The translations under genes were made by a program, and so were the position numbers. Under the pieces are notes generated by a model. It saw only the letters and a program-made list of their open reading frames with translations. It was not told the DNA's origin and made no database searches. This document shows positions 3,191 through 26,993 of a stretch of 64,000 bases of DNA, in pieces. Within the stretch, counting starts at the first letter, position 1; each line of letters begins with the position of its first letter. The DNA comes from Haliotis rufescens (lineage: Eukaryota): positions 48,794,001 through 48,858,000 of the forward strand of contig NW_025963779.1 of assembly GCF_023055435.1 (NCBI RefSeq), read 5' to 3'.

Positions 3191-4282
3191 TTACATAATG
3201 TTAGTGTACTGGTTTCCCGAGGGTTGCATGGACTTAGTAGCACTGGGGAGTGACTGATGTACACTAGGGTACAAATAGTCATAGGGATTTCTAGACCTGT
3301 CAAAGCTGGAAGATGAACATTGAGGCATGTAGGTTCCAGCCAGGGACGAGCTTCCCGGGGGAGAGCTGGAGAGAGGGGAGCCGGTCAGGGAGCTGTTCAT
3401 GCTGCTGGCGTTGTAGTAGCCAGTTGTAGGAGAGTAGCCTGTAGGAGATCCCATGGTCCAGATACAGGGGTCAGGCTTGCCTGTTGTGCTGTATGGGTGT
3501 GTCTGGGTTAGTCCCGGGGGTAAGGAGCCGAGACTCAGGGGGTTGAAGCTTGTGTAAGGAGATGGACCTCCATACAACCCCAATAACTGTCCGTAGGGAC
3601 TGGCAGGATGGAATGAAGGATCTTCTCGACGTTGCTTTTGTGCCGACTTGAAACGTTTAGAACGACGGAGGAAACTGCCGTTGCCGAACATGTCCCCACA
3701 AGATGGATGCAGAGCCCACAGGTTACCCTTGCCTGGTTTCCCTGGGGGTCGGGGCACCTTGACGAAACAGTCATTGAGGGAGAGGTTGTGTCTGATGGAG
3801 TTTTGCCATCTCCGTTGGTTGTCTTCGTAGTATGGGAATCTCTTGACGATGTAGTTGTAGATGTCGTTGAGAGTCATCATGCCTGTTGTGGAACTCTCGA
3901 CGGCCATGGTGATGAGAGCCACATAGGAATAGGGAGGCTTCTTGTTGGAAAACTGCCTGCTTTGTTGGGAGAGAGTTGACGTTCCTGGGACAGTGTCTAG
4001 ACTTGGGTCCTCTTCCTCATCGTTTTCGGAGCTCAGTGAGGAAGATGGTGAAGGCAAGGTGTTGTGATCGCCGCCTGGAACTCGATGCTGTTGAAGAGAC
4101 TCCCTCATGTCTCTAGGAGAGAGTTCAGGCCTGACGTCAGCTTCACGTAAAGGTACATATGACTCGACCTGGAACTTGGACGAAGGAGGAAGCTGTGTTG
4201 CATATGGAGGTGTCATCGTCATTGCCATAGCTGGGTCGGCAACGGCATTTCCATACTGAAACGTTGCTGGATTGAACAACAT
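3191..4282 (-). CDS. foxAB: Forkhead-box transcription factor, FoxAB-like, copy 1 (363 aa, intronless)
   Basis: Complete forkhead domain [14 protein letters not shown]...[20 protein letters not shown]...[29 protein letters not shown]. It mixes FoxA-like ([18 protein letters not shown]) and FoxB-like ([11 protein letters not shown]) features; [10 protein letters not shown] fits my recollection of FoxAB. ATG at 4282, TATA-like at 4359-4365, AATAAA at 2967-2972 (minus). The Fox call is certain; the subclass is inferred. Confidence 0.9.
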
Positions 4283-4358
4283 TTTGTTATCTCAGAAAAC
4301 CCAGTGTGTTATAACTGAGTAACAGTGAGACTGTATGCCTTCACATTTGTCGGCGGAG

Positions 4359-4557
4359 TATATATCCCTGTACTAATCCCCCAAGAAAACATCTTACAAT
4401 TCCAATTTGCTCCCCGAGAGAGAATCTATTGTTATATTGTAAATTGGACTGTACTACTCTCGGTGAATTACAGGAGGTGTGGCCAGTGTATAATGCGCCC
4501 GGATGCTATTGGCTACTGGTAAACATAAGTCCCGCCTACCTACTTACAGACCAATCA
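4359..4557 (-). promoter_or_regulatory. Putative promoter of Fox copy 1
   Basis: TATATA about 77 bp upstream of the ATG, TAATCC at 4374-4379, ctattggct CCAAT box about 4506, GC box cccgcc about 4530. The CCAAT and GC-box block is shared with copy 2. Confidence 0.55.
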
Positions 4558-7500
4558 TTTGTTCCACATTGATAGGAACCTCTAGCCTGCATAATGAACA
4601 TGTATGATACTGTGAAAAATGTCTACCTACTTCTCTTCACCATAGTTAAATTAATGTTCCACAAAAAACCATAAGCCGAATAAAATATATATGGCGATGA
4701 ATGTGTTTCTACATTAGATGAATAACACAAAGGAATTTTGGCCACAAGGCAACACTTGTAATTACATAAGTACACATTTTGATAAAGGCTTTCCTACCCC
4801 TCTTTTCACTGAGGCAGCTCAACCTATATCCATAGGGTTCCAGTAGCCCTCGGGGGATCAAGTACATGTCAAGTTCTAAAGCTTAAATCAACACTGATGT
4901 CATAACCCTGTAGAACAAATTACATTTTACCAAATATATGTCTAGATGATAAAAGTAAAGGTAAAGGCCAAATGAACAAGACGTATTCTACGTATCAAAA
5001 TACGTTAAATTGTTTGTCTTGATTCACGGCAAGTATCTCGAGCTGGGTATCATAATTCCAATGTTCTTGTAAATTAGATGCTGTAAATGGATACACTACA
5101 GCCCGCTATGAGAGGAGGGATACATGCACTACATTTATGATCAAAGGATCGGCATATCTTTGTGTCGAACTATAATGAGTGATGGTGACCTGTATGTACA
5201 TTTTGAAACCAGCGACACCTGGTGACATATTTAGTGGGATAGGCTGGGCATATGTATGTGTTGTAAGTGAATGGTCCCAAGTGACATAACCACCACATGT
5301 CGGATACGTCACGGGCCATGGAGGCGGTAATCGAATCGGGGAGACGTAGGGATTCGTTAAAAGGTTGTTTCTACACTTATTGACATCACAACAATTCAGT
5401 ATCGATCATCACTGAAATAACACCCAATCTGTGTCAGCAGCTGAGTGGTATCAAGATCTTGTACAAGTACACCTCCTACATACATACCCCTTTGTCTGAA
5501 CAATGTACGAGAATGAATGATTAAAAACAAATTAACAGGCCAATATATTGATATAGTTGTTGCTCAAGTTTTCATTTGTTACAAGGTATTTTCCATTTGT
5601 TGTTGTCAGTGGAATGATGATAATAATTTAAATTATCGCAATAGAATCTATTCGTCTTCTAATATTCAAGCTATGACTTTGTATGCACGAAGGGGATATT
5701 TTAGGCTAAACATGGACATTGCAAAAATACTCAAATGCTCAGAGAATAGTGATGTGGCATGTTGGTGAAGGATGACGCAAGTAATCGTATCGGGGAGCCT
5801 TAATGACTCAGTTAATGTGTTGTCTCTACACTTACTGACGTCACAATAAACACGCAGCATCACACTTCTCGGGTTGTCAGCATCGATCATTACAGAAACA
5901 ACGCATAATCTGTGTCAGCAGTTCTCTTAATTAAATTTAGATCCCTTCATTGGACAAATGATGTTGTACAAACTGTGAAATTGTCCCTACGTTATAGTGT
6001 ATACTGTTTGTCGGAATATTTCAACTCTGTAAATAGTGAGCTAGATTAACACTTCTTTATTTAGAGGTCTATATTATTCAAAACATTTGTATGGTCATAT
6101 TAATGTTGTACACCCAGGAGGAAGGGATAGCATTACAGGTAGTAATGCAACATCATTGCAGTTTTAGTTGAACAACAGATATTTCCTCCTTATATCGATT
6201 GCTTCTATTACAGCACATGTGTGTATTATTGCACACCTGAAAGTGTTACAGAGATTGGCTTCTCGGAAAGTGGAATACCAGTTGATGAAATCATCTGGTA
6301 AAGGTGACAAACTCCATGTGATTGTCACCCAATGCTGTTCATTACATGGGGTTTAGCAATTATGTTAGAGGTGTTCGTGAACATGTTAGAAAAACACCAC
6401 ATGCTTTGATGAAGCCGCCCAGGTAACAAGATTTAAAGGAAACTGGATTAAGATTCGAAGGCCCAGCCACATGTAGAAAATCTATTGTTTTATCAAATAC
6501 CGATTATGACTGTTGTTCATAGCAAGTACAATATTGATGCAGTTATTGTTTTCTTACGCTTCCTAATTCACCGTCAGTAGCACGGCCGCCCTTTATCAAC
6601 TGGCTATTGACTACCGTATTTCCAAAATGGATTACTGTAAAACTGCATTTCTCCCTTTCTATCGCCCCGATACTGAAATCAGAGTAAGTACGGTGGCGAC
6701 AGCGGCAGGGGACAATGCAGACGCCAGACGCCAGAATCCAATATCACAGAAGACCGAAATATAAATCTTGTTTTTTTTCTTATGTGTGACATCAACATTA
6801 TTTACGGCCTCTTTAAGGATGTTGAAAAAAGTGTACAAGCTTTAACAATATTAAACCACATTTTAATAATGATCACTCCCAGAATAGAATCCGACAACGG
6901 AAAAGTCCATTTTACGAACAGGTGGATTAAGTTTGTTTTTTCCCGAATATTCTCACAATCCTCACGTCGATTGTCTACACCTTTTCTCCTCATACCAATT
7001 GTCATATCTCTCCCGCTTTAGTATGCGATCGTCCGGCCACTGCGTTTGTCTCGCAGCCCAGCTACATCTATGGGGAACAACTTACTAGACATTTCCCTCT
7101 AAAAAATAACGTCGTCCAATATATGACGTCATCAAATTGCGAGCACATATTCAAATCTCCAGAAATGGAATAATGATCGAACAATGTTTTATCGTGAAAA
7201 ATACCACTCTTCGTTCTTCATTGCCCTTTGCAATTAATCGCGTAGCTATCACATTTATCCAAGGAAAATGTTTCTTGAAGTTAAATATACCATGATTGGA
7301 AATGTTTGATTTATGTTACACTAATCACTGCAGAACAGTGTACGTCGTTTGTTGGTGAGGGGGAAGGATCTGGTATATTTCGTGAAGCAGAAACAAACCA
7401 GAAGTACCCTTTAGTACAGCAGGATTAATGATAAAGCAGGCGTCACCCCAACACAGCATTGAGCGTTATCATATTCCATACACTGAACAACACACTCACA

Positions 7501-8605
7501 CTGAAGTATCATAGTGTTGCATGGTCAAAGAACACTACAATGACATCTACTCAACACAAGCCGGGCAAACAAACTACATCACAGAGTGTTTGTAAGACAC
7601 TGAAGAAACTTCATTTAGGTAGATACACATCTCACCTTCCATGATTTCACAGACGCTACACTATTGCTGGGAAATCCCAGATAGTAATGCCTTACAGACG
7701 GCAGTTTCCAGATTGTGAATCTCATTGTGCTTGACGTGCTGTCAAGCTGTAAATATCCATGTCATGTTCTTGAAATTGGTAGAATTAAGACAATATGCCG
7801 CTACAGCCATTTTCCAATTTGAAATCTATCAAAATTGACTGAAGTCCTTTTCCTGTTAGAATTTCTTTTTTTAAATATTGAAAATTCTATTTTAAATGTC
7901 TGTATATATCTGTAGACAACTTACATGTGATTTTATGTGAATGCATTATGTAATTGTTACTGTTATTGAATTTGCACTTGATAACATTGAACACAAAGTA
8001 CTGACACAAGCAGATGAATGGCCGGTCACATTTTTTGGACGAAACATTTGAAGAATTGCAAGACGAATGTTACACAGTTTCGCCGGAGCTAGAATCATGT
8101 AAGCCGGTCAAGCACAAGTAATAGTCTGTGACCAGTCACTGTAAGCCCATTGTCGTGGGCTAAAGTCTAGTATAAATATTGAATCAGCGAGCGGTATTCA
8201 CGTAACAATCGCCAGGTGTCGCTTCTGCAGATTGTTTCCTTGATGCCAGATCATGATGTAGGTTCGTCGAGTTACTACACAGCTGTAGGAATCTGTGTAT
8301 CTCGTAGATGTAGCTACTACCAATACCAATAATGACGAATACGTTTCATTGACAGACGGGCATGTCTAACCAACCTACCCGACAAGACCTTACTTAACAG
8401 GGATTAAAAACGATTGAGTGATCGCACAGTAAAACGAACACTGGAATTCACATATGAAAAAAAAGAGAAATGTTAAAAAGATTTTTATTAATACATATAT
8501 ATATATATATTCATATGTAAATAGAAAAAAGTACATTTTATTTAACAGTGGAATTTCTGTTCATAAACGGGATAAACATTCAATGACACTAGGTGTGTAT
8601 ATGTG

Positions 8606-8776
8606 AGTGAGTGAGTGAGTGAGTTTGATTTTACGCCGCTTTTAGCAATATTCCAGCAATATCACGGCGGGGGACACCAGAAATGGGCTTCACACATTGT
8701 ACCCATGTCGGGAATCGAACCCGGGTCTTCGGCGTGACGAGCGAACGCTTTAACCACTAGGCTACCCGACCGCCCC
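8606..8776 (-). mobile_element. SINE family A, full length with TSD
   Basis: Near-identical to 461-628; 13-bp TSD gtgtgtatatgtg at 8593-8605 and 8777-8789. Confidence 0.9.
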
Positions 8777-8994
8777 GTGTGTATATGTGGTTGTATACAG
8801 TGTCTCAATTCACTTGTCACAATAGTCAATACGCGTAGGTTCAATATCAACTGATAGTTAACTCTAAAAATAAAAACAATATTTCCCTATGCTGTGGAAT
8901 AGAGCTAGCTAGAGCTGCCTAGACTTGCTTTTGTATGCGTTTCTAGATTTATTTATTTTTCATAGAATAAATATATTCCACGGTCATGGTGCAG

Positions 8995-9712
8995 GACTAG
9001 AGGAGATTGGACTGTAGGAGATCCCAAAGTCCAGATACTGGGCTCAGGTTTACATGTTGTACTTTAGGGGTGTGTCTGGGTCAGTCCCTGGGGTAGGGAG
9101 CTGTGCTGTAGGGGTGTGTCTGGGTCAGTCCCTGGGGTAAGGAGCTGTGCTGTAGGGGTGTGTCTGGGTCAGTCCCTGGGGTAAGGAGCTGTGTTGTAGG
9201 GGTGCGTCTGGGTCAGTCCCTGGGGTAAGGAGCTGTGCTGTAGGGGTGTGTCTGGGTCAGTCCCTGGGGTGAGGAGCTGTGCTGTAGGGGTGTGATTGGG
9301 TCAGTCCCTGGGGTAAGGAGTTGTGCTGTAGGGATGTGTCTGGGTCAGTCCCTGGGGTAAGGAGCTGTTCTGTAGGGGGGGGGGGGGGGGGGGTCTGGGT
9401 CAGTCCCTGGGGTGAGGAGCTGTGCTGTAGGGGTGTGTCTTGGTCAGTCCTTGGGGTAAGGAGCTGTGCAGTAGGGGTGTGTCTGGGTCAGTCCCTGGGG
9501 TAAGGAGCTGTGCTGTAGGGGTGTGTCTGGGTCAGTCCCTGGGGTAAGGAGCTGAGACTCAGGGGGTTGAAACTTGTGTAAGGAGATGGACCACTATACA
9601 ACCCGCATAACTGTCCGTAGGGACTGGCAGGATGGAATGAAGGATCTTCTCGACGTTGTTTTTGTGCCGACGGAGGAAACTGCCGTTACCGAACAATTCC
9701 CCGCAAGATGGA
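8995..9712 (-). pseudogene. Truncated FoxAB-like pseudogene (end of forkhead domain plus C-terminal region), closest to copy 1
   Basis: 9553-9712 aligns to copy 1 about 3530-3710 and shares the copy-1-specific ggactggcaggatggaatgaaggatcttctcgacg. It has a 19-bp deletion between cgac microhomologies, lacks most of the forkhead domain, and is interrupted by a 44-bp tandem array. Confidence 0.9.
9065..9552. repeat. 44-bp minisatellite, about 11 copies, derived from Fox coding sequence
   Basis: Unit gctgtgctgtaggggtgtgtctgggtcagtccctggggtaagga is the reverse complement of the [13 protein letters not shown]-coding segment. One unit carries a poly-G run. Confidence 0.95.
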
Positions 9713-10770
9713 CTTGTTCAATTACTAACACTCTAGTAATACAGTGTGCGATTTATTTATGACATTAATAAATAAAGAATTTAATTCTGAATAAATTGTG
9801 CTGTAAACATACATTCCTGATTTGTGAAAAAAACATATAAATATAAATCGGTTGCGTATAAAAATTCTCAATTCCGAAAACACTATAAAATCGTTTGATA
9901 TTTTCTGGAGCAATGTATTTTCTGTAAGGTGAAAATGTTCTACAAATTCACGTGACTAAGTCATATATGTAAGACAAACTGTACTTATGACCATACGGCC
10001 TGAAATACTGAATATCATAATTGTGTCTAATACATATTTATACCCACATGAAGTTTACTATCGTATGTCATCTAATTAAACATGATCGGCGATCGAATGG
10101 TTAATGTCACTGGCCACCGTCTTCATACGCATTTGTACATACAGGACACCATCTTGCTGTATCAAAGAGTTGAAATCTTAACGTCAGTTTGTTTCGTTTA
10201 ATATTTACACATCAAATTGAGAAGACTTGTTTCCACTTGATTACCTTCCCGAAATGAACAAAGTCACCACGTGATGATCCATATCAGACACAGCACGTTA
10301 GAGTCTATTATTTATCTATTGCCAAGTCCTTGTTTCTTGTCGGCTCAAGCATCAAAGTGAAGGTGTCTTGTTCCTCAGCATATACAGACACCCTCCCGTG
10401 ATACTCCGGTAAAGCAACAAGCAGCTTAGTGTAATCCGACCACACTACATGAAAACCAAAACCAAAATAGTGATAATCTGTTGTTTACTTTAAGTGACGA
10501 GGATCTTAAGTCACCTTTGGTGTAGGACCAACTCAATAGTTTATATGTCTTTAAATAATATACATTTTCGAAATAGTTTAAGTTCAATACTTTTTAAGAT
10601 GTTTAAAAGACGGCAAACAATGTCACAACATATTTGTTGTTATAAGTTACTACATGTGTGTTAATGCGTTCTATATGACTTGTGTATATACGTCAATTAT
10701 TGACTGGATTCACTGTGCGTCATATGTATAATCTACGTATAATGTACATGTAATGTACAAGTGCATGTGA

Positions 10771-10772
<2 letters not shown>

Positions 10773-10821
<49 letters not shown>

Positions 10822-11471: not shown

Positions 11472-12920
11472 TATACTGAACCAAATTAAACACTTCACAA
11501 TCCTAAAATTTTAACAATTTGACCAGTCATGGCCACGTATTGTCTTCAGATAACACCCGTTTTTGTGCAGGTGAATCGATCAAAATCATGTGCACAGCAC
11601 TATAGTGGCAAAAGTGTTTTTTCACGTGCAACTGGTCACGTGGCCATAATACCGCACGTGTTTTCAGCCATACTTGTTAGCAGTCATTAACAAGAAAAGA
11701 AAAACACAAGAAAACAAAAGTCTTTACGGCCATTTGTCATGCCACGCCTTTCAAATGTGCAACGTGAACGTGCCATCGGCATGTTGCAGACGGGAACGTC
11801 CGTAGCTGAAGTCGCAAGGACGATGGGTTGTAGTCGACGGACTGTTTATGATTTACAGACGCCTCTACAGCAAACGGGTACCACCGCTGATCGCCCTCAG
11901 CCAGGTCGACCACGTGTGACATCACATGCAGAGGATCGTCAGATTGTCTTACGTCACCTCCGTAACCGATTCTTGACGGCTACATCAACCAGAAATGAAC
12001 TGTTTAGGGGTAGACTTTGTGCGCAAACTGTTCGAAACCGTCTGAGAACGGCTCACCTTCAAGCACGATGGCCATACTGCGGGCCGATTCTGACTCAATT
12101 ACACAGACGTCAACGTCAATTGTGGGCACAGCGACACTTACGATGAACTCAGAGGAATTGGAATCAAGTCGTCTTCAGTGATGAATCCCGATTTAATCTT
12201 CGATTTGCGGATGGTAGGGCGAGGGTGTGGAGGCGCCGTCATGAACGTTACGCCCAGTGTTGTGTACAGGAAGTTGACAGATTTCGAGGCGGAAGTGTCA
12301 TGGTGTGGGGTGCTTTCTGTGGCAATGCACGTTCCAGGCTTCTTGTCATCCGTGGCAACCTCAACGCTGCTGCTTACCGCGACCAGTTACTGGCACCAAA
12401 ACTTCTGCCTTTTATGGCAGCACATGGACCCGGTTTGATCTTCCAACACGACAATGCCAGACCCCACACAGCAATTTTGACAAGGAATTTCCTTCAGAAT
12501 GAGTCAACGTCATGGACTGGCCGTCAAGGTCTCCCGACCTCAATCCCATCGAACACGTCTGGGATGCCCTTGGCAGAAGTCTGCGCACTCTCCAGAACCA
12601 ACCATTTTGCAGCAACAATGGCGTCGTCTTCCCAATCATGTGTTCACAAGCATCACAAGGTCCATGCGGAGGCGTTGTGTGGCAGTTGTCAACGCACATG
12701 GTGGCCATACATGCTACTGAACTTGTGTGCCATCAGATTCTCGTGTTTGGGACTTATGGTTTAAACTGTTGATGTTATTACCGAATACCGTAGGTGCTTG
12801 GAACAAATTATGGTTACCACCGTTAATTAAAATCCTTCTTTGGACATTAATGATTAAAAATTACCTTCTCTGATACATGTGTCCGTTGTATATAATATAT
12901 GGGATTACTTTTAAAAATGT
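11472..12920 (+). mobile_element. Tc1/mariner DNA transposon with disrupted DDE transposase (11739 to about 12720)
   Basis: MPRLS..RERAIGML, DRPQPGRPRVT, VVFSDESRF, FQHDNARPH, WPSRSPDLNPIEH. Premature TGA at 12144-12146 and a frameshift near 12500. The left end tatactgaac is shared with the 40096 element; no right TIR was found. Confidence 0.9.
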
Positions 12921-12923
12921 AAT

Positions 12924-13875
12924 GAGGAGGGAATATTGAAGCTATTATAACATGATGTTTCAGCACTACCGAGGAGGGAATATTGAAGATATCATAACAT
13001 GATGTTTGAGCCATACCGAGGAGGGAATATTGACGCTATTATAACATGATGTTTGAGCCATATCGAGGAGGGAATATTGCAGGTATGATAACATGATGTT
13101 TGAGCCATACCGAGGAGGGAATATTGACGCTATTACAACATGATGTTTGAGCCATACCGAGGAGGGAATATTGCAGGTATGATAACATGATGTTTGAGCA
13201 CTACTGAGGAGGGAATATTGAAGGTATGATAACATGATGTTTGAGCCATACCGAGGAGGGAATATTGAAGCTTGATAACATGATGTTTGAGCCATACCGA
13301 GGAGGCAATATTGAAGATATGATAACATGATGTTTCAGCACTACCGAGGAGGGAATATTAAAGCTATGATAACATGATGTTTCAGCCATACCCAGTGGGG
13401 AATATTGAAGCAATTATATCATGAATTGTTAGCCATACCGAGGAGGGAATATTGAAGCTATTTTAACATGATGTTGAGCCATACCGAGGAGGCAATATTG
13501 AAGCTATCATCACATGATGTTGAGCCATACCGAGGAGGGAATATTGAAGCTATCATCACATGATGTTGAGCCATACCGAGGAGGGAATATTGAAGCTATC
13601 ATCACATGATGTTGAGCCATACCGAGGAGGGAATATTGAAGCTATCATCACATGATGTTGAGCCATACCGAGGAGAGAATATTGAAGCTATCATCACATG
13701 ATGTTGAGCCATACCGAGGAGGGAATATTGAAGCTATCATCACATGATGTTGAGCCATACCGAGGAGGGAATATTGAAGCTATCATAACTTGATGTTTGA
13801 GCCATACCGAGGAGGCAATTTTGAAGCTATCATAACTTGATGTTTGAGCCATATCGAGGAGGCAATATTGAAGCT
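12924..13875. repeat. 46-47-bp minisatellite, about 20 copies
   Basis: Unit ccataccgaggagggaatattgaagctatcatcacatgatgttgag with variants. Confidence 0.95.
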
Positions 13876-14279
13876 TCAGCGCATGGAGAACACACACACG
13901 TACAACATCCAGCAGTGGGAGATAACACGCTGAACAAATTGAGATGCCATGATGATGTACAAAAAAGACATCGAGATAAAGAACACCACTACACAAGAAT
14001 AGACAATTTTGTGATAAAGCATATTTATTTTTGAATGTATATTATACATATATATCAATAATTATATAACTTATATCAAAGCATGAAAGAGTACATTTAC
14101 AATTCAAGTCACTTGTGATATATGCATAGACATCAGTCGTTGCTGTGTCAACCAAGTTTATGTATAATATAATTATATAGTGGCGTACCTGTACGCCTTT
14201 TACATCAATGACAAGCAATTTGATAGCACTATTATCGATGCTTTTGATCCTGAGATGATATGATTGTCAGCCAAGGCCT

Positions 14280-15386
14280 TCATTTGGACATACCATATGA
14301 ATACATAGGCTGTGAAGCTCCTGTGAATGACTGACACAACTGAGGATAGGAATAATTATATAAATTTTGGATAGCACTCGAGCTCGGTGATGACACTTGT
14401 GGCATATATGTCCCAGCTAGAGGCGAGCTTCCCGACTGGGCAGACAGCATATGTGGCATGTAAGGTCCTGGTGGAGAGCTGGAGAGAGGGGAGCCGGTCA
14501 GAGAGCTGTTGATGCTACTGGCGTTGTAGTAGCCGGCTGTAGGAGAGTAGACGCTAGGAGATCCCAAAGTCCAGGTACTGGGGTCAGACGTGCCTGCTGT
14601 GTTGGGTGTGTGTGTCTGGGTCAGTCTCTGGGGTAAGGGGGTAAGATTCAGGTTGAAACCTTGGTAGGGGGATGGGCCCCCGTAAAGACCAAACTGTCCG
14701 TATGATGTGAACCGTTGAATCAGTGCGTCGTCTTGTCGCTGTTTGTGTCCTGACTTGAAACGTTTAGAACGACGGAGGAAACTGCCGTTACCGAACATGT
14801 CCCCACAAGAAGGATGCAGAGCCCACAGGTTACCCTTGCCTGGTTTCCCCGGGGGTCGGGGCACCTTGACGAAACAGTCATTGAGGGAGAGGTTGTGTCT
14901 GATGGAGTTTTGCCATCTTCGTTGGTTGTCTTGGTAGTAAGGGAATCTCTTGACGATGTAGTTGTAGATGTCGTTGAGAGTCATCATGCCTGTTGTGGAA
15001 CTCTCGACGGCCATGGTGATGAGAGCCACATAGGAATAGGGAGGCTTCTTGTTGGAAAACTGCCTGCTTTGTTTTGAGAGAGTTGATCTTCCTGAGACAG
15101 TGTCAATGAGTAGTTCGTTATTGCTGTCCTTATCTGTACACGGTGACGATGATGGTGAAGGCAGAGGGTCGTTATCGAGCAATTCTGCCTGTTGTCGCTC
15201 TGTTTCTCCGAGGAACATGTCATCTATTCTGTTCGGCGTTCCTGGGGGCGCAGTTGTCTCCCTTGTGAGTGCCACTCTTGTAAATGTTTGAGGCAACATG
15301 TACGACGGCAACACTGGTGTCTCACCCTGCATCACAGCATCCCCAGCCACGTTGCCATACGGAGATACACTAGTATGATTCAACAT
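14280..15386 (-). CDS. foxAB: FoxAB-like copy 2 (368 aa from first ATG)
   Basis: Same forkhead domain. The ORF-track start at 15476 is a TTG upstream of the TATA box. ATG 15386 gives [19 protein letters not shown], homologous to copy 1 [25 protein letters not shown] at 14024-14029 (minus). Confidence 0.9.
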
Positions 15387-15461
15387 TGCGTAAGTGACGG
15401 TTCTGCAGCGGTTTAACTGAGAAGGTACAGGAATGTATACCGTCGTTACTCCATCCCTAGG

Positions 15462-15624
15462 TTTATATCGCCGCAAAGATTATCCCCTCAATACAGATAG
15501 CTTTGTCTTTTGATTAGTCAGCCATTGTTGGGTAATTTGGAATGGGTAACGTTCACAAGAAGGCGTGATATCTTTAATTGGCCGTTCATTCCTATTGGCT
15601 ACCAGATCTGAAGCTCCGCCCACC
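15462..15624 (-). promoter_or_regulatory. Putative promoter of Fox copy 2
   Basis: ATATAAA (minus) about 77 bp upstream of ATG 15386. CCAAT boxes at about 15577 and 15594 (ctattggctac) are followed by GC box ccgccc, the same arrangement as copy 1. Confidence 0.55.
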
Positions 15625-16898
15625 ATTGTTCATACCATTAAACCACTCCTGCTTGGGAAGCGCTTTTAAATAGATCGTTTAATCCAATTTGATTTCCAAA
15701 TTTTTTTATGCATATCAAAGTCGATTTTTGTCTGTAAAATTATTGTAAAATAAAAAAAATACGATCAGGAACGCGGGTAATTACATGCACACTTAAAGAC
15801 ATAGTATATTTAAATCGTGGAACAAGAGCAGTTCTACTGATGTTAGTGATGTAATAAGTTACTACATGTATGGTCAGTGTAATGTACATATGAAGCATGT
15901 GCTATATAAAGACAGCGTACTCCCAGGCTATCACATCAGGGTATCAAATCAAGTCGTACATAAAAACGACAAAACCCTTTTCATTTTCGCAATATATCTC
16001 TGGTAAAAACAGAGAAGCTTGTACGGTTCCGACTATATCATGAGCATATGTTTGGGAAACTCCATCACCATAAAACGTTTTGAAAGCTTTACTGATACCT
16101 TAAACGTTGTAACTTTGATCAAACAACTTTTGAGTCGTAAGACGCTCTTTGAAATCTTCATACAAAGATCATGTTCGATTGTACCTAAGTGTTGTGTATT
16201 GTAGAGACCAAAGGCTGGAGCTGCCGGAATATTACTCGAACAGAAAGGAAAGGTTGACTTTTGGAACGTTGAAGTCATTCATCTTGTCACTCTGACACAT
16301 ACAAAAACATACTTTTGTCAGTAGGAATTGTACACGATTCTTCTTGTGAAAACTATGAAAAACGTGTAGAAAATACCAACGGTTACATATGTTAGTAGGG
16401 GTATGTGTGGACTTTACGAGCAAAATAGAACAAAGAATTTACAAAGCATATTTGACTGGAAATAACATATTACAAAAGAATGGATCAAACGGGGACATTT
16501 AGTGAATTTAGTGCCAACTGACTGCTGGTAAATTCCCCTCCACAAACAAGTAGCTGCTGATAACTGTGGTTCACTGACAACGAATTGCCATTATTATGCA
16601 AAAATAAAATGCTTCGGTAAATATTCCAAGCACGTTAAAGCCATTTCCACCACATTTCAATCCAAGTTCTACCCTACGTGTATAAGCATAAGAATCGTCC
16701 AAAGATAAGATTTTAATTTCAAGATATTGTTGAACCTATTGTTCATTTCAGTGTACATTACATACGTTAAATTCGGAAATTGTTTATAATATTAGATCTT
16801 TCATAGATGCATGCAATTCTACAAAATACAGTTACTGATTAGCTGAAGGTGTATCTATCAGTTCCAGTTAAATTGTTCTGACTATCATGCACAAATAG

Positions 16899-17284
16899 GT
16901 GAGGTGCGATGAAATTGNNNNNNNNNNNNNNNNNNNNNNNNNNNNNNNNNNNNNNNNNNNNNNNNNNNNNNNNNNNNNNNNNNNNNNNNNNNNNNNNNNN
17001 NNNNNNNNNNNNNNNNNNNNNNNNNNNNNNNNNNNNNNNNNNNNNNNNNNNNNNNNNNNNNNNNNNNNNNNNNNATGCCGATTTATAGTGCTAGCTCACT
17101 GAGATACCATGCCGCAGTTTAACATGAAAACACCACTCTGACAGTATACTGACTCTGAGCCGACCAGTCCTTGTTTTAGCCCCTTAATGCCGAGCCTCTG
17201 GCAGGGTAACAACGAGTACCATCTTTTAACGTCTTTCCGTATGACGCGGCCGAACGCTCTACCACAAGACCACGGAGGCGGTCC
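16899..17284 (-). mobile_element. SINE family B spanning an assembly gap
   Basis: Tail start (gtgaggtg) lies before the gap and body/head after it; TSD tgcacaaatag at 16888-16898 and 17285-17295. Confidence 0.85.
16918..17074. other. Assembly gap (N)
   Basis: Run of N. Confidence 1.
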
Positions 17285-19940: not shown

Positions 19941-20036
19941 CTGTTTGTTTGTTTGTCGCCTTTTACGACAAGCATAGTGGCCTTTTACGGCAAGGGTGGG
20001 TTGCTGAAGACCTATTCTAAAACGGACCTTCACGGG
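19941..20036 (-). mobile_element. Family C, internally deleted copy
   Basis: gtcgccttttacgacaagcatag...gggttgctgaagacctattcta...cttcacggg joined directly to (gttt)n. Confidence 0.7.
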
Positions 20037-21026
20037 ATAGTTACTTTATAATCTAATAGTGTTTGCCAAAATATGTAGACCGTTTAAGGTTAATAAAGTT
20101 GTCAGTAGTGAATATCATTTATGATCATTAAACTAAAGTATTTGTTCATGACATAAGCCTAGGACATAAAAACATGTATGTCATACCCCAGTGACGTAAG
20201 TATGCAAATTAGATAACGGGAAACAGCACTTTTTCACTGGTGTGCGTGATCTGGTTATTCAGGGAACAACACGGATTCCTTTGGTCACGTCGATGTTGGA
20301 AACAGCCTTTGATAGATGACAGGGGGTGACACTGTTGTCTGCTCTTGAAGGTTACCGGGTGGTTACAGACTGATGGTCACAGATACAGACTGTAAATAAC
20401 ATCCCCATGACCATTTTCTTGGCGAATGATGAAGAGCTGTTTATACCGTCACACACTCTACATACCAATGCTTTATCGGAAGTCGTACTGAGAAAGTCAA
20501 ACCATCCACCAAAATGTGTAAAAATGTGTAAAGCAGGCAGGGTCCAGACGTCAGATGGACTGACAAATCACTTTGCCGCGTACACACCTTGTCCAAAGGT
20601 TGAATGACAAAAATGTTCCACCCAATCAAAACTCTCAGGTAACTGATTACAAGAACAACCATTCTGTGAATCATAACTCTCACATAAATCCTGATAACTA
20701 CCATCAATTTTCCAAAATAATTTCAGGAAGCATTCCATCAAACACACTGAGCACAGAAACATCCCAGCTTGATTTGTTCCTGGAACCCCCCTGTCGCATA
20801 ACAGCGTCCCGTGCATACGTCATGTTCAAATCGCCAGGAGACAACAATCAGCAATCTCAAATCATCTAGTTTTCTTTGTCTCGTCATGAGATGTTTGCTG
20901 GTTTTGTAACTTTCTGAAACTAAACCATTAATCATGTTATACCTCCAAGTCCAGTGCCAGTCAAACGGCGCCTACTTTTCGTTGAAAGCGACATGACATC
21001 GACTAAAATGTATTGTTGTCAGCTAT

Positions 21027-21058
<32 letters not shown>

Positions 21059-21740
21059 ACAAGTTAGAGCGTGGTTAGAATGACTAAAGTTGTGGAATTA
21101 CACCGCAGATATGATGAAATACAACAAAGTGCATCGTTATTGTTGTAATATATAAAGTTGCAAATATGCTGTAACATATCGTTCAATCAGGTTGGGGGTC
21201 CAGGAATACCAGAGAAGGTATATGGATATTAAGTTTGTTTCACGTTCCCAATAAATAAATATATCTGGATGCATAACATACCACAATTTCGAAATGAAAA
21301 TGATAAATAGAATTCACCATGAGTGGTTTTTAATATGGGAGAGGTACATGATGTCAATATAGGTTTCGCTCTTATGTCAAGCTGTGGTTTTCTGATCTCA
21401 CTGTAAGACTGTTCAAAACCCACTGACTCACTCACTGTGCAACTCTTTAAAATACATTATGTAAACGTAATGCAGCAATACATCAATATGCCATGATAAG
21501 AATGTGTCGTGTAGATTTGTTCCTGTCAAATGATTTTGCAATGCCAAATGCCCATGAACAAACCAGCAACTTTTAAAATTCTGGAAATAAATAGTTTATT
21601 CATAAATAAATGCTGTATGTGCCATTCAATATTACAAAGGCGTCATACGGAGAAGCATATAAATAGTCAATGTATAACAGTGAGATACATGTACAATGGT
21701 TATTGTTCAGAGCACTACTGAGCCCACTTCCAGTCTTTCG

Positions 21741-22868
21741 TCACTGATCATTTGCTAATGCTGTGCTGAGGCTTGGGTAAAGATGTCCTGTGTGCTGTCT
21801 GGGTGCGAAGTGCTGTTGTAGAGCCAGGTAAGTTGTGTGGGTGTGGTCCGACTGGGCACATGGCATCTGTGGTATGTAGACCACTTGGGGTCCTGATGGA
21901 GAGCTGGAGAGAGGGGAGCCGGTCAGAGAGCTGTTGACGCTGCTGGCGTTGTAGTAGCCAGCTGTTGGAGAGTAGACTGTTGGAGATCCCATTGTCCAGA
22001 TACTGGGGTCAGGCCTGTTTGCTGTGCTGTAGGGAAGTGTCTGGGTCAGTCCCTGGGGTAAGGGGCCAAGGTTTAGGGGGTTGAAACCTGGGTAGGGGGG
22101 CGGAACCCCGTAAAGACCAAACTGTCCGTTCGGACTGACCTGATAGAGAGTGGTGTCATCCTGGCGTTGTTTTTTAGCAGACTTGAAACGGTTAGAACGA
22201 CGGAGGAAACTGCCGTTACCGAACATGTCCCCACAAGATGGATGCAGAGCCCACAGGTTACCCTTGCCTGGTGTCCCCGGGGGTCGGGGCACCTTGACGA
22301 AACAGTCATTGAGGGAGAGGTTGTGTCTGATGGAGTTTTGCCATCTCCGTTGGTTGTCTTGGTAGTAAGGAAATCTCTTGACGATGTAGTTGTAGATGTC
22401 GTTGAGAGTCATCATGCCTGTTGTGGAACTCTCGACGGCCATGGTGATGAGGGCCACATAGGAATAGGGAGGCTTCTTGTTGGAAAACTGCCTGTTTTGT
22501 TGTGAGAGGGTCGACGTTCCTGACACACTGTCAAAGCTGAGATTGATATCATCGTCGTTGTCGGAGGATACTGAAGATGATGGTGATGGCAGGATGCTGT
22601 TGTCCTCGTGTACTGACAGGTTATATTGGTCACTGGGCAAAGTCTCCGTGTGTGTAGTATTCCATCCACTTTCTGTCACAGACGTATGCTGAGGCCTGTG
22701 TTTAACGTCCACGTCCCTTTGTACAGGTAGAGAATGTAAGGACGGGTGAGATACCGGCGTGAAGAGGGATGTCGAAGACGGCCACTGCTGCGTCAGACAG
22801 CGGGTGCTCTCGTCTCCATCACGGCACACCTGGAAGGGGTTTACACAAGGCATAACTGAACTCGTCAT
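21741..22868 (-). CDS. foxAB: FoxAB-like copy 3 (375 aa)
   Basis: Same forkhead domain with two private substitutions ([15 protein letters not shown]). ATG 22868, TATAAA at 22933-22938, AATAAA at 21595-21600 (minus). Confidence 0.9.
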
Positions 22869-24235
22869 ATTTACCCAAGGGAAGAACAGGATGCTTTAGT
22901 GTTATATGTCGATACTTTCCACATCCTGGGCATTTATACCAGAACAGATTCAGGTGTCTTTGGCGAACAAACTGGATAACAATACAAGTTACACATAGAA
23001 GAAGAAAAAGAGATTTGCGTTAATTAAATGTGTGCTGTCATTGGCCGATCATGCTATGCTGATCTGTCTGGTGTTGTTGTAGGTGTGGGGGCTGTTCAGC
23101 TGCACAGATCACCCGAGGACGTGCAATTGTACAATGTAAACACAGATTATCTGTGTTGACTTAAACATCTCATGCTCGTTAACATCTACTTATGTATGTA
23201 GGTTTAAACGATTGGCACAAAGAAAGCTAGAACCTCAGAAGTACTTTGCATGTCTTTACTACCTGATACTCAACATTCATATTACTAAACAGCAAAGAGT
23301 TTTAATATCAAAGTTATATTTCATTTTTAAAAATTCGACCCCACTGAGATTCACGACTAATAAGTTTTTTTTAACCAAGGCAGTTACTATACGGCGACAT
23401 AACAACAGTGTGTCTAAACAACATGGTGACTTAACAACGAGGTGAGAGGACATGAATGAAGCTTGCTGTCTCCCACTTGTAGGCATTAACATGGGCTTGG
23501 CGGCTTCTTTGATGTCGTCAAACGACTAACGAGATCAAATCAGCGCTGGATTAGGATTAACGGAATCCGTGACTTGATAGCCTAATTGTAATTTAATTAG
23601 AACGAGATTATCACTTTAATTCATGAAAGAGAAAATATTGATCCATATTCTGTTTGCTTACGCGTTCTAATGCACCATTGTCGGAACGTTTGTACCAGTG
23701 ACCTCGTCCCAGAAAACCTCCACAAGCCTCCAACCCCGGTCCCCGCCGGATCAACGTAGGCGGGGTAGCAACTGTCTTACTGCACGAGGTGGCGACAGTA
23801 GCGGACTGACTGCACGCGTCAAGCGTTATAATCCTATTTTGCAGGGAGCCAAAAGTATTTTATTTACCGATTAAACATTTTGAATATTGACAGGAAGCTA
23901 AATTCATTTTAATGGAAATTTCACAAAGCAGATCGTTATGGAAAGTGAATGCAGGTGTCTGTCACATTAGACAAAGACAAATATAAAGAACTGACTTTTA
24001 AACTTGTCATAATGTCTAAACCAACAAAAACCAACGATTTCGTCATGTACCGGTACTAAAGGCTTATTCTAAAACGTTTGTTAATATCAAACAACGTTCA
24101 TGGTCAATATTAACCTGATATATTGCCCTGCATTAACGTTGGGGTTTTAGTTGAATATATTGGAATATTAAGGCTTTTAACCACCTTAAAAAAATATTTA
24201 ATTGTTGGTATGCGGCAGTGGTGATATTCCTTGTA

Positions 24236-24730
24236 GGTGTTGACTTGGCATATACTAAGTTGAAACTGTCACGTACACACACCGTTACTTCCCTAGATTT
24301 GTTGGCCTGGTATATACCAAGTTGAAACTGTCACGTACACACACCGCTACATCCCTGGATATGTTGACCTGGCACATACTAAGTTGAAACTGTCACATAC
24401 ACACACCGCTACTTCCCTGGATATGTTGACCTGGCACATACTAAGTTGAAACTGTCACATACACACACCGCTACTTCCCTGGATATGTTGACCTGGCATA
24501 TACTAAGTTGAAACTGTCACGTACACACACCGCTACATCCCTGGATATGTTGACCTGGCACATACTAAGTTGAAACTGTCACATACACACACCGCTACTT
24601 CCCTGGATATGTTGACCTGGCACATACTAAGTTGAAACTGTCACATACACACACCGCTACTTCCCTGGATATGTTGACCTGGCATATACTAAGTTGAAAC
24701 TGTCCAGATTTTAAGTTGAAGCTGTCACAT
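24236..24730. repeat. 62-bp minisatellite, about 7.5 copies
   Basis: Unit atgttgacctggcacatactaagttgaaactgtcacatacacacaccgctacttccctggat. Confidence 0.95.
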
Positions 24731-25877
24731 ATCTTGAACATTTCAAAACCGTTATCATGGGCCAACAGCGGTCAAGACAATTATGATGATGAGTTAAATT
24801 TATCATAATATATGTCATATTTCATAATATATTTAGAAATTATATACGACCCAGGTTTTCAAGTAAAGTTGCTGTAATGTATACCGTTATATATTGTGTT
24901 TGTTCGTGTACCGGTACTATAGTTGATACATGCGATGTTGGTTTGGCACTGGTCACATTACCGATCTGATGGACATGTGGTGTTTCACATGGGAGTCGAG
25001 TGTGGAGTGTTTCCCTTTCATTTGATGTCACGGAGGAAAAATACATTATACGAATATAAACGAAATATAAACAGTTTAGCTAGACTTAACAGACACGTAA
25101 AGATTAACCTGAATTGGAGCTTTGTCGAGGACCCTGGAAAACGAAAATGGGATAAGAAATATATAATTTTGTTCCCACGAATCATTAGCTCGTTCCATCA
25201 AATATCACGTTATAATATCATACATGTAAGTTAGTGAACCGGTTTCCAATATTTGCTATTCATTGGTCACGGATGTATTTTGAACTAAATAGTGTTAACG
25301 ACAGGGGGTAAAGATGTATTTGAAATACAGACTGTTCCACAAATAAATCACCTTGGTAAAAGATTGATGGCGATTGTCAGTTTCAAAATATGCCAGGGAA
25401 AGCGACAATGCATCTGCACAGAGGCCTGAACATATATAGCAGATTAACGCCATCACTGTACACGTGTTTACTCCATTATCAAGTGTTATAACAAAATTCT
25501 ATTATCTAAAAATATAGGCAAATCATAGACCATTAAGTTAAGTTGTCAGAAGTGATGTAGAGTTACAGGTGGCGTTCCCAATATTGAAATCATTTGGTGG
25601 GGGATTGTCATAGCACAGATGAGGCTTTACGACTTACGAAATACTGCTGTTGAAAATTGTATACAAGAAACACATACAAATCACTATAATAATTGTATTT
25701 TATTATATTAGCCATTTATAACATATGTACAGGATCACATATATTCGTTTGTGATGAAGTTGCTGAATGCCACACGGCAATTGGATCAGCGATGTTAATG
25801 GTTAATATTATAGCACTTTTTTATGCAAGTGGGGTACAAAAACGTATTCAATGTCGATGATCAAAAAGTACAGATTG

Positions 25878-26993
25878 TCAGCCACTTTCCGCTTTGGTTA
25901 CTGAATCGCTGATAACATCTGAACTGCTCTTCGAAAATGTCAAGGCTTGGTAAAGAGCTGGGTAACATGAATGTGAGAAGTCTGTGAGAGAACTAGGATA
26001 TGGCATCTGTGGCATGTAGGTCCCACCCAGGGACGAGCATCCCGGAGGAGAGCTGGAGAGAGGGGAGCCGGTCAGAGAGTTGTTGATGCTGCTGGCGTTG
26101 TAGTAGCCAGCTGTAGGAGGAGAGTAGCCTGTAGGAGATGTCATAGTCCAGGGACTGGGGTCAGGCCTATTTGCTGTGGTGTAAGGATAAGTCTGGGTCA
26201 GTCCTTGGGGTAAGGGACCGAGACTTAGGGGGTTGAAACCTGGGTAGGGGGGCGGAACCCCGTAAAGACCAAACTGTCCGTTCGGACTGACCTGATGAAG
26301 AGTGGTGTCATCCTGGCGTTGTTTTTGAGCAGACTTGAAACGTTTGGAACGACGAAGGAAACTGCCGTTACCGAACATGTCCCCACAAGAAGGATGCAGA
26401 GCCCACAGGTTACCCTTGCCTGGTTTCCCTGGGGGTCGGGGCACCTTGACGAAACAGTCATTGAGGGAGAGGTTGTGTCTGATGGAGTTTTGCCATCTCC
26501 GTTGGTTGTCTTGGTAGTAGGGAAATCTCTTGACGATGTAGTTGTAGATGTCGTTGAGAGTCATCATGCCTGTTGTGGAACTCTCGACGGCCATGGTGAT
26601 GAGAGCAACGTAGGAATAGGGAGGCTTCTTGTTGGAAAACTGCCTGCTTTGTTGTGAGAGGGTCGACGGTATGGAAACGTCAATGCCGACGCCGTCATTA
26701 TCTGAACATGACGATGGCGATGATATGTTGCTGATGTCGTTTTCTGATGGGATAGCCAGGGGCTCTACTCCCGGGGAGACCTCCAGGGCGTTTTGTACCA
26801 TATCAAGAGGTACAGTTGTTTCCCCGGGATTTGTAAACACTATGTGCGACTCGGGACTTGAGTTTGGAGACACCAATGACAACATCTGCTGCATCGAAGA
26901 AAACGACGACATCATGTTGGATAATTTGTCAGTTTCTTCCGTGCTATAGTTAAACATATCTATACCAGGAACACTCGTGTTGGTGGCCGACAT
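25878..26993 (-). CDS. foxAB: FoxAB-like copy 4 (371 aa from first ATG)
   Basis: Same forkhead domain. The ORF-track start at 27023 is GTG; the first in-frame ATG is 26993. TATATAA at 27071-27077, AATAAA at 25699-25704 (minus). Confidence 0.9.

What the first reader, a model, noticed from the sequence alone, without database searches (positions are those of the whole stretch)
3645..26660. Domain-restricted concerted evolution: forkhead DNA nearly identical while N-termini are barely alignable
Seen: over about 315 bp of the domain, copies 1 and 2 differ at about 6 positions by my manual count, mostly silent, and copies 3 and 4 are similarly close. Identity collapses a short distance 5' of STLS(Q/K)Q(S/N)RQFSNKKPP, and the first 100+ codons, UTRs and spacers share little. 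Purifying selection alone would not hold silent sites identical. Inference: these are old duplicates whose DNA-binding domain is homogenised by gene conversion, giving a constant reader with variable effectors.
Basis: partly seen in the sequence, partly recalled or inferred. Interest (0 to 1): 0.85.

Follow-up and report, generated by a model that had tools for sequence, protein, structure and literature searches.

The report
Abalone FoxAB array with homogenised forkhead domains
Four of the ten tandem FoxAB transcription-factor genes of the red abalone lie here, and gene conversion keeps their DNA-binding domains almost identical while their tails diverge: a clear but not unprecedented case of concerted evolution limited to part of a gene.

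Summary

**What is there.** The window (Haliotis rufescens, G000:C1) holds four intronless forkhead genes on the minus strand. They belong to a 10-gene FoxAB array spanning about 152 kb.

**Silent sites.**
- In the forkhead core, synonymous differences per synonymous site are 0.07-0.13.
- In the codons just outside it they are 0.33-0.72 (Fisher p 7e-3 to 5e-11). The N-termini are saturated.
- At codons with the same amino acid, array copies share the codon in 86-95% of cases. Other Fox classes of the same genome share it in 29-48%.

**Across four Haliotis species.**
- Trees from the N- and C-terminal regions group genes by ortholog, so the duplications are old.
- Two domain residues are species-diagnostic across all derived paralogs. 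Each needs 6-7 independent changes on the flank trees.

**Other support.** Mosaic tracts, four-gamete failures and raised GC3 agree with conversion.

- A second homogenised island of about 120 bp in the C-terminal half.
- Six more copies outside the window.
- The canonical FoxAB founder shares only the 3' half of the domain.

The assembly gap at 16918-17074 is intergenic.

This is a new member of a known kind; TLR1/TLR6 and TPRX1/TPRX2 are precedents.

The parts
3191..4282 (-). c1 (array member g07): intronless FoxAB-derived gene, 363 aa, stop codon included
   Evidence: ORF. Pfam Forkhead at E 1.1e-36. Translation identical to database protein P0122.
3644..3979 (-). c1 forkhead block (112 codons, STLS..RFKS); the homogenised core starts at about KKPPYSY
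   Evidence: 9-13 nucleotide differences from the other three copies. dS 0.10-0.19. Identity plateau of 0.95-0.98.
3353..3472 (-). c1 second homogenised island (C-terminal motif DPxxW..YYNASS..SSSPPG)
   Evidence: dS 0.06-0.48 among derived copies in this block, against 0.5-1.8 in the 50 codons before it. Coordinates.
8983..9718 (-). 5'-truncated remnant of a further copy. It keeps the last ~17 codons of the domain and the C-terminal part, and carries an internal 44-bp minisatellite at 9058-9554.
   Evidence: tblastn matches. 85% nucleotide identity to c1 nt 576-798, with repeated 44-nt matches. Tandem Repeats Finder.
14280..15386 (-). c2 (g08): intronless FoxAB-derived gene, 368 aa, stop codon included
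   Evidence: identical to P0121. The ortholog in a related species appears transcribed over 14011-15424 (run X15).
14751..15086 (-). c2 forkhead block
   Evidence: In runs X12 and X15, contigs break at its edges and word depth is 8-20 times that of the flanks.
14466..14585 (-). c2 second homogenised island
   Evidence: Word-depth peaks at 14485-14581 of 415 (flanks 44) in X12 and 922 (flanks 22) in X15.
16918..17074 (.). Assembly gap (N), intergenic between c2 and c3
   Evidence: The nearest coding bases are 15386 and 21741. Not filled and not looked up.
21741..22868 (-). c3 (g09): intronless FoxAB-derived gene, 375 aa, stop codon included
   Evidence: identical to P0123.
22179..22514 (-). c3 forkhead block
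21891..22010 (-). c3 second homogenised island
25878..26993 (-). c4 (g10): intronless FoxAB-derived gene, 371 aa from the ATG at 26993, stop codon included
   Evidence: identical to P0142.
26331..26666 (-). c4 forkhead block
26040..26162 (-). c4 second homogenised island
   Evidence: A shared g02-c4 tract over codons 166-180 has Bonferroni p 0.004.

Best explanation
The window holds four members of a 10-gene, same-strand tandem array of intronless FoxAB-class forkhead genes in Haliotis rufescens. The array has one canonical founder (g01) and nine abalone-specific derived copies.

The copies are old duplicates. Repeated non-allelic (interlocus) gene conversion keeps two short islands nearly identical at the DNA level, silent sites included:
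- the forkhead core, about 290-310 bp;
- a C-terminal motif block of about 120 bp.

The N-termini, the linker after the domain, the far C-termini and all non-coding DNA have diverged independently.

Inferred mechanism: amino-acid constraint slowed divergence in these islands. That kept enough identity for heteroduplex formation, so conversion there sustains itself. The flanks passed the identity threshold and escaped.

Inferred outcome: a set of factors with one DNA-reading head and different tails.

Shown here: the pattern, the age of the duplicates, the species-wide sweeps and the mosaicism. Inferred: the identity-threshold mechanism and the functional consequence.
For: 1. **Silent sites.** Synonymous differences per site are 0.07-0.13 in the core and 0.33-0.72 in the adjoining codons, p 7e-3 to 5e-11. 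In the full 10-copy matrix, domain dS is 0.07-0.32 among derived copies while the flanks are saturated.
2. **Not codon bias.** At amino-acid-identical degenerate codons, derived copies share the codon with c2 in 86-95% of cases. Eight other Fox loci of the same genome with at least 44 comparable codons share it in 36-48%; two loci with fewer give 29% and 44%.
3. **Old duplicates.** N-terminal and C-terminal trees group genes by ortholog across four Haliotis species, with starred branches.
4. **Concerted evolution.** Domain residues MA[V/I] and YI[V/I] are fixed across all 8-11 derived paralogs within a species and differ between species. They need 6 and 7 changes on the flank tree. The YY[E/Q] variant is distributed differently among orthologs of H. 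rufescens and H. cracherodii.
5. **Mosaicism.** A Sawyer-type run test finds five pair-specific tracts at Bonferroni p 0.004. Copy g06 is c1-like 5' of the domain, g02-like just after it and g03-like further on. Within the 303-bp core, 29 of 45 informative site pairs fail the four-gamete test.
6. **Internal control.** The founder g01 against the derived copies has pS 0.58-0.70 in the 5' half of the domain and 0.12-0.21 in the 3' half, p 2e-5 to 2e-3. Codon identity is 22/39 against 46/50.
7. **GC3.** It is 0.63-0.68 in the domain and 0.60-0.70 in the second island, against 0.33-0.57 elsewhere in the derived copies. This fits GC-biased conversion.
8. **Independent data.** In runs from related species, contigs break at the domain edges and word depth rises 8-20 fold over both islands.
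Against: - The test 'paralogs closer than orthologs' therefore rests on a few amino-acid sites, not on silent sites.
- Domain dS is 0.07-0.32, not zero. That is far above the roughly 1.5-2.8% divergence from the closest related species laid. Homogenisation is therefore patchy or slow, not continuous.
- The founder g01 also shows lowered dS in the second island (0.29-0.61). Some intrinsic synonymous constraint there is not excluded.
- The GC3 excess could partly reflect amino-acid composition.
- No conversion event was observed directly.
Confidence: 0.85

Rival explanations
1. There is no conversion. Silent sites of the domain are held by selection at the nucleotide level, for example codon usage, mRNA structure, or the antisense open frame that overlaps the domain in every copy.
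For: An antisense frame stays open for 107-132 codons over the domain in all ten copies. The founder g01 also has reduced dS in the 3' half of the domain and in the C-terminal island.
Against: - Selection cannot make all paralogs of one species share a residue that all paralogs of another species lack.
- Other Fox genes with the same amino acids use the same codon in only 29-48% of cases.
- The 5' half of the domain is silent-saturated between g01 and the derived copies (pS 0.58-0.70).
- Copy differences fall on sense third positions, which are antisense first positions. The antisense peptides therefore differ between copies, and they have no Pfam match.
- That antisense frame is stopped only by sense codons TTA, CTA and TCA, so an open frame is unremarkable.
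Confidence: 0.05
2. Homogeneity comes mainly from unequal crossing-over and birth-and-death turnover: chimeric genes form and copies are replaced. Non-crossover conversion tracts are not the main cause.
For: - Copy g06 is a three-donor mosaic with a truncated 5' end.
- g03, g04 and g05 form a near-identical triplet, and every species has its own g03-type multiplet.
- A truncated remnant lies at 8983-9718.
- Copy number differs between species.
Against: For most members both the N-terminal flank and the C-terminal flank stay orthologous by position across species, while only the segment between them is homogenised. That needs short internal tracts, not crossovers. Unequal crossing-over probably contributes to copy-number change, but it cannot alone explain the islands.
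Confidence: 0.07
3. The duplicates are young. Domain dS of about 0.1-0.2 is their true age, and unrelated N-terminal sequence was recruited at each new site.
For: The N-termini are almost unalignable and the non-coding flanks share nothing.
Against: Each N-terminus and C-terminus has a clear ortholog in H. cracherodii, H. rubra and/or H. asinina. The copies therefore predate the species, yet their domains carry species-specific states.
Confidence: 0.02
4. Assembly artefact: the shared domain is a consensus pasted into several loci.
For: The repeat is near-identical, and a scaffold gap lies in the region.
Against: - Every copy carries private silent variants: 37 variable sites over 339 aligned nt among the nine derived copies.
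- The repeat is only about 300 bp and sits within unique flanks.
- The same architecture is annotated in three other species' assemblies.
- Independent runs from related species show multi-copy word depth exactly over the two islands.
- The gap is intergenic.
Confidence: 0.01

Closest known systems
TLR1/TLR6 region-limited gene conversion in mammals (Kruithof et al. 2007, PMC2077338)
   Same: Tandem paralogs in which N-terminal parts group by ortholog, while a defined conserved region is more alike between paralogs than between orthologs. That region is kept so by independent conversions in each lineage. The authors interpret it as limiting divergence of one functional region while other parts diversify.
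   Different: That case involves two genes and a 300-aa region of a receptor. Here there are nine to ten transcription-factor genes, a tract of about 100 aa plus a second small island, and a mollusc host.
TPRX1/TPRX2 (ETCHbox) homeobox-biased gene conversion in eutherians (PMC8208926)
   Same: Lineage-specific, fast-evolving duplicates of a conserved developmental transcription factor. Repeated conversion homogenises mainly the region that encodes the DNA-binding domain. It was detected by trees for the homeobox alone versus the whole gene and by GENECONV.
   Different: That case concerns a homeobox rather than a forkhead domain, and a gene pair rather than a 10-gene array. Here the conserved founder gene is itself partly included (3' half of the domain).
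FoxAB class of forkhead genes (Saccoglossus, sea urchin, amphioxus, cnidarians, annelids; PMC4077281, PMC9539403)
   Same: The array genes form a starred clade with Saccoglossus FoxAB, apart from all other Fox genes of the abalone genome. The founder g01 keeps the flanking motifs of FoxAB orthologs. Owenia has two foxAB paralogs.
   Different: FoxAB genes are reported as single-copy or two-copy. A nine-fold derived expansion with altered flanking motifs (RRFAD to RQFSN, IALITMAI to VALITMAV) did not turn up in the papers I searched. RefSeq names these genes FoxB1-like, FoxD2-like, FoxE1-like and lin-31-like.

Membership tests
Forkhead/Fox transcription factors | A forkhead (winged-helix) domain matching PF00250 above the gathering score | tested here: met
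   All four window genes score 125-126 bits against a cut-off of 27, covering profile positions 1-87 of 88.
FoxAB class | The domain groups with named FoxAB orthologs, apart from other Fox classes | tested here: met
   A clade of 15 rows with support 97/94* holds the array copies, Saccoglossus FoxAB and other invertebrate sequences. It excludes the 18 other Fox loci of this genome that entered the tree and vertebrate FoxC2, FoxE3 and FoxD3.
FoxAB class | Conserved motifs flanking the domain in FoxAB orthologs: [15 protein letters not shown] upstream and IQHVSSYGHFSLYG downstream | tested here: met
   The founder g01 carries both motifs. The derived copies keep recognisable but altered versions. 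That these motifs define the class is my reading of the alignment, not a published criterion.
FoxAB class | No vertebrate ortholog (class lost in vertebrates; PMC9539403, PMC4077281) | tested here: inconclusive
   The best vertebrate hits belong to mixed classes (FoxC2, FoxE3, FoxD3), at 58-59% identity over 27-30% of the query. This is consistent with the feature but is not a dedicated test.
Concerted evolution by interlocus gene conversion | Within the tract, paralogs of one species are more alike than orthologs of different species | tested here: met
   Tested at the protein level only. Species-diagnostic residues are shared by all derived paralogs and need 6 and 7 changes on the flank trees.
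Concerted evolution by interlocus gene conversion | Outside the tract, genes group by ortholog, so the duplication predates speciation | tested here: met
   N-terminal and C-terminal trees have starred ortholog groups across up to four species.
Concerted evolution by interlocus gene conversion | Silent-site identity beyond what protein constraint and codon bias give | tested here: met
   86-95% identical codons against a 29-48% baseline. Core versus flank pS has p as low as 5e-11.
Concerted evolution by interlocus gene conversion | Mosaic tracts or phylogenetic incompatibility along the alignment (GENECONV-type signal) | tested here: met
   Five pair-specific tracts at Bonferroni p 0.004. 29 of 45 site pairs fail the four-gamete test. 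This was my own implementation of Sawyer's run test, not GENECONV itself.
Concerted evolution by interlocus gene conversion | GC-biased signature in converted tracts | tested here: inconclusive
   GC3 is 0.60-0.70 in the two islands and 0.33-0.57 elsewhere. Amino-acid composition was not controlled for.
Concerted evolution by interlocus gene conversion | Direct observation of conversion events (segregating tracts, pedigrees) | not testable with these tools
   Reads were laid on cross-species contigs.

The most novel reading that the evidence does not exclude
The conversion network reaches into the deeply conserved founder gene. The abalone-specific FoxAB copies and the canonical FoxAB (g01) exchange the 3' half of the forkhead domain (recognition helix and wings) but not the 5' half. 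In the north-east Pacific lineage the founder has taken on a derived-copy residue: PG[R to K]PGKGN in H. rufescens and H. cracherodii, while R is kept in H. rubra, H. asinina and Gigantopelta. If the flow runs from young copies into the founder, lineage-specific paralogs are rewriting the DNA-reading surface of an ancient developmental regulator. The whole co-expressed array would then act as one binding specificity with ten different tails.
Probability: 0.35. Interest if true: 0.65.

Novelty: new member of a known kind. Interest (0 to 1): 0.5.

Why it matters
- **A compact natural example.** It shows how conversion can split a gene into a part that evolves in concert and parts that diverge freely, across a nine- to ten-member transcription-factor array rather than a gene pair.
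- **An undescribed expansion.** It flags an abalone-specific expansion of FoxAB, a class with little functional data, that my paper searches did not find described and that RefSeq names inconsistently.
- **A practical warning.** Domain-only trees will misplace these genes and underestimate their age.
- **A testable system.** One can ask whether a shared DNA-binding head with varied tails gives competition, dosage or sub-functionalised regulation. One can also ask whether conversion can carry changes from young copies into a conserved founder, and whether a truncated copy (g06) that still takes part can spread damaging variants.

Tried and rejected
- **The look-up of encoding contigs** was closed.
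- **The look-up of sequencing runs and read laying**:
  - The runs I could lay came only from the same species or close relatives, about 1-3% diverged. They cannot separate conversion from constraint at silent sites.
  - The rows shown did not cover the domain variants (133 rows hidden).
  - Organism D gave one 150-nt domain piece with one difference, and its identity is coded, so I drew no conclusion from it.
  - Between species, the c2 ortholog in run X15 differs at 3 of about 290 domain positions and at 22 of 1119 flank positions. That is too few to test.
- **Sawyer-type run test with g01 included** was confounded. Many 'polymorphic' sites were only g01 against the rest, so I repeated the test without g01.
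- **Antisense open frame over the domain** was considered as a source of silent-site constraint and rejected.
- **Column offset error.** One of the three columns counted was the wrong one (offset 46 instead of 45). One search recounted it correctly.
- **Papers.** Searches for an abalone Fox or FoxAB array, or for conversion in it, found nothing. The library is incomplete, so this does not prove absence.
- **The search of earlier findings** by words found nothing.
Full report
**What is in the window**

Four open reading frames on the minus strand each encode a protein of 363-375 aa with one forkhead domain. With stop codons they are c1 3191-4282, c2 14280-15386, c3 21741-22868 and c4 25878-26993.

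Their translations are identical to four database proteins that carry no source name and sit on a 94.2-Mb contig. That is how the tool marks proteins encoded by the window itself. Other array members are identical to named Haliotis rufescens RefSeq proteins. The genome is therefore red abalone, and the genes are single-exon as annotated.

The window is G000:C1:48794001-48858000.

**The assembly gap**

The N run at 16918-17074 lies between c2 and c3. It is about 1.5 kb upstream of the c2 start codon and 4.7 kb downstream of the c3 stop. No gene or reading frame crosses it, so nothing below depends on continuity across it.

**Checking the observation**

I used the 336-nt block from STLS to RFKS: c1 3644-3979, c2 14751-15086, c3 22179-22514, c4 26331-26666.
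- The six pairs differ at 9-13 positions, mostly at third codon positions.
- c1/c2 differ at 9 positions (7 in the last 315 nt). c3/c4 differ at 11 (10 in the last 315 nt).

Nei-Gojobori estimates:

| Region | Result |
|---|---|
| Domain | dS 0.10-0.19, dN at most 0.015 |
| 25 codons upstream | dS 0.65 to saturated |
| N-terminus | 31-40% nucleotide identity |
| First 100 C-terminal codons | dS 0.21-0.59 |
| Far C-terminus | dS 0.98 to saturated |

A sliding window over seven distinct derived copies shows a plateau of 0.95-0.98 identity from about nt 30 to 315 of the block. The edges are sharp on both sides.

Synonymous differences per site are 0.07-0.13 in the core and 0.33-0.72 in the adjoining 80 codons. 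Fisher p runs from 7e-3 to 5e-11. Non-coding flanks share nothing detectable.

**Beyond the window**

A six-frame search of the whole assembly finds ten copies, all on the minus strand of the same contig, between 48,668,231 and 48,820,666. I call them g01 to g10; c1-c4 are g07-g10.
- g01 has the most divergent domain (86% amino-acid identity).
- g03, g04 and g05 are a near-identical triplet.
- g06 has no start codon before the domain and is annotated only from an internal methionine.
- A further 5'-truncated remnant lies in the window at 8983-9718.

**Which Fox class**

The array genes form a clade with support 97/94* together with Saccoglossus FoxAB and related invertebrate sequences. This clade excludes the abalone's other Fox loci that entered the tree and vertebrate FoxC2, FoxE3 and FoxD3.

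g01 keeps the motifs that flank the domain in those orthologs. The derived copies carry altered versions. FoxAB is an invertebrate class absent from vertebrates, single-copy in most species studied and two-copy in Owenia.

So g01 is the canonical FoxAB, and g02-g10 are an abalone expansion derived from it (clade support 98/89*).

**Are the duplicates old?**

Yes. Proteins from H. cracherodii, H. rubra and H. asinina were aligned with the ten copies.
- Trees from the N-terminal region alone and from the C-terminal region alone group genes by ortholog across species, with starred support. For example, c2 groups with its counterparts in all three other species.
- The paralogs therefore predate the split of these abalone lineages.

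**Is the domain evolving in concert?**

The domain alignment has few variable residues, but they are telling.

| Residue | H. asinina | H. rubra | H. cracherodii | H. rufescens | g01 orthologs |
|---|---|---|---|---|---|
| MA[V/I]ESS | I in all 11 derived copies | V in all 9 | V in all 8 | V in all 9 | I in all species |
| YI[V/I]KRF | I | I | V | V | M in all species |

- On the flank-based trees these two residues need 6 and 7 independent changes. One array-wide sweep per lineage explains them.
- A third variant, YY[E/Q]DN, is distributed differently among orthologs of H. rufescens and H. cracherodii. This suggests exchange since those two species split.

**Could selection alone hold the silent sites?**

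Three controls say no.
1. At codons where the amino acid is the same and the codon is degenerate, eight other Fox loci of the same genome with at least 44 comparable codons share c2's codon in 36-48% of cases. Two loci with fewer comparable codons give 29% and 44%. Derived array copies share it in 86-95%.
2. g01 against the derived copies is silent-saturated in the 5' half of the domain (pS 0.58-0.70; 22 of 39 codons identical). It is near-identical in the 3' half (pS 0.12-0.21; 46 of 50 codons identical), with p from 2e-5 to 2e-3. Silent sites of this domain are therefore free to change. The founder shares only part of the tract.
3. Selection cannot produce species-diagnostic states shared by all paralogs.

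The antisense open frame over the domain was also considered.
- It is open in all copies and has no Pfam match.
- Copy differences at sense third positions change its first codon positions, so its peptides differ between copies.
- That frame is closed only by the sense codons TTA, CTA and TCA, so its being open is unremarkable.

**Signs of recombination**

In the alignable 675 columns, the fraction of polymorphic sites is as follows:

| Region | Polymorphic sites |
|---|---|
| Upstream of the domain | 70% |
| Domain core | 7% |
| 50 codons after the domain | 55% |
| Next block (second island) | 29% |

- A Sawyer-type run test on polymorphic sites only, without g01, finds five pair-specific tracts at Bonferroni p 0.004:
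  - g06-c1, codons -28 to -1;
  - g02-g06, codons 104-125;
  - c3-c4, codons 124-148;
  - g03-g06, codons 155-173;
  - g02-c4, codons 166-180.
- g06 is thus a mosaic of three donors.
- Inside the 303-bp core, 29 of 45 informative site pairs fail the four-gamete test.
- GC3 is raised in the two islands (0.60-0.70 against 0.33-0.57). This is as expected for GC-biased conversion, though amino-acid composition was not controlled for.

**A second island**

Codons 50-100 after the domain (motif DPxxW..YYNASS..SSSPPG) form a second island. In the window it lies at c1 3353-3472, c2 14466-14585, c3 21891-22010 and c4 26040-26162.

Its dS is 0.06-0.48, while the 50 codons before it have dS 0.5-1.8.

**Reads**

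Twenty listed runs hold all or part of the c2 gene. I laid four on 14000-16900. All four were stored as contigs.
- **Run X12** (a related species, DNA-like, 0.8-2.8% diverged in the flanks): contigs stop at the domain edges. Word depth is 500-660 over the domain and 415 over the second island, against 32-44 in the flanks.
- **Run X15** (another related species): it covers only 14011-15424 and nothing upstream. That fits a transcript of the c2 ortholog. Depth is 171-317 over the domain against 22 in the gene-specific parts, which hints that several paralogs are expressed together.
- **Caveats:** the 'RNA' label of X15 is the tool's guess, and depth from contigs is a weak measure.
- **Conclusion:** these data argue against an assembly artefact. 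The species are too close to test silent-site concerted evolution.

**Mechanism**

The best reading is repeated interlocus gene conversion. It is confined to segments where protein constraint kept enough identity for heteroduplex formation, and there it sustains itself. The flanks diverged past the threshold.
- This threshold idea is established theory (Walsh 1987; Teshima and Innan, as cited in PMC8208926). For this locus it is inferred, not shown.
- Unequal crossing-over probably adds copy-number change: the g03-type multiplets, g06 and the remnant.
- That the array provides one DNA-reading head with different tails is also an inference.

**Comparison with known cases**

The pattern matches region-limited conversion in TLR1/TLR6 and homeobox-biased conversion in TPRX1/TPRX2. 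It is a new member of that kind.

It is distinguished by the size of the array, the two islands, the participation of a truncated copy, and the partial inclusion of the conserved founder. My paper searches found no description of an abalone FoxAB array.

**Limits**

The cross-species evidence is therefore at the protein level and rests on a few sites, though these are consistent across 37 derived genes. Domain dS is not zero, so homogenisation is patchy or slow.

Noticed in passing
G000:C1:48790871-48791203 (locus L004), about 3 kb before the window start: Array member g06 has no start codon upstream of the domain and is annotated only from an internal Met (233 aa). It carries KPPFSY instead of KPPYSY. 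Its domain is still among the most homogenised (dS 0.07-0.09 to c1 and c2), and it is a mosaic of three donors. A probably defective copy therefore still takes part in the exchange.
   Followed up: partly
G000:C1:48668231-48668566 (locus L010, g01): The canonical FoxAB founder shares near-identical codons with the derived copies only in the 3' half of the forkhead domain. In H. rufescens and H. cracherodii it has K where H. rubra, H. asinina and Gigantopelta have R (PG[R/K]PGKGN).
   Followed up: partly
window 8983-9718 (-): A truncated remnant of a further array copy. A 44-bp unit from the C-terminal coding region has expanded to about 11 tandem copies at 9058-9554. The scan noted it separately as s1-816562.
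   Followed up: partly
window 11739-12764 (+): A remnant of a Tc1/Tc3-type transposase between c1 and c2. The first ORF matches HTH_Tnp_Tc3_2 and winged-HTH models. The second ORF has no Pfam match, and the frame is broken between them.
   Followed up: partly
window 12924-13875: A 47-bp minisatellite of about 20 copies at 91% matches, just downstream of c2.
   Followed up: no
window 15940-16327: A high-copy interspersed repeat upstream of c2. Summed word depth reaches 10^4-10^5 in a DNA run of a related species, against about 32 in neighbouring unique sequence.
   Followed up: no
loci L005, L006, L007 (G000:C1:48686449-48701049): g03, g04 and g05 are a near-identical triplet spaced about 7 kb apart. 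Each of the four Haliotis species has its own multiplet of this type, clustering by species. The cause is either whole-gene concerted evolution or repeated recent duplication.
   Followed up: partly
window 3632-3979, 22167-22505, 26295-26657 (+): Antisense open frames of 112-120 codons overlap the forkhead domains. They are open in all ten copies, have no Pfam match, and differ between copies. I judge them a by-product of codon usage.
   Followed up: yes
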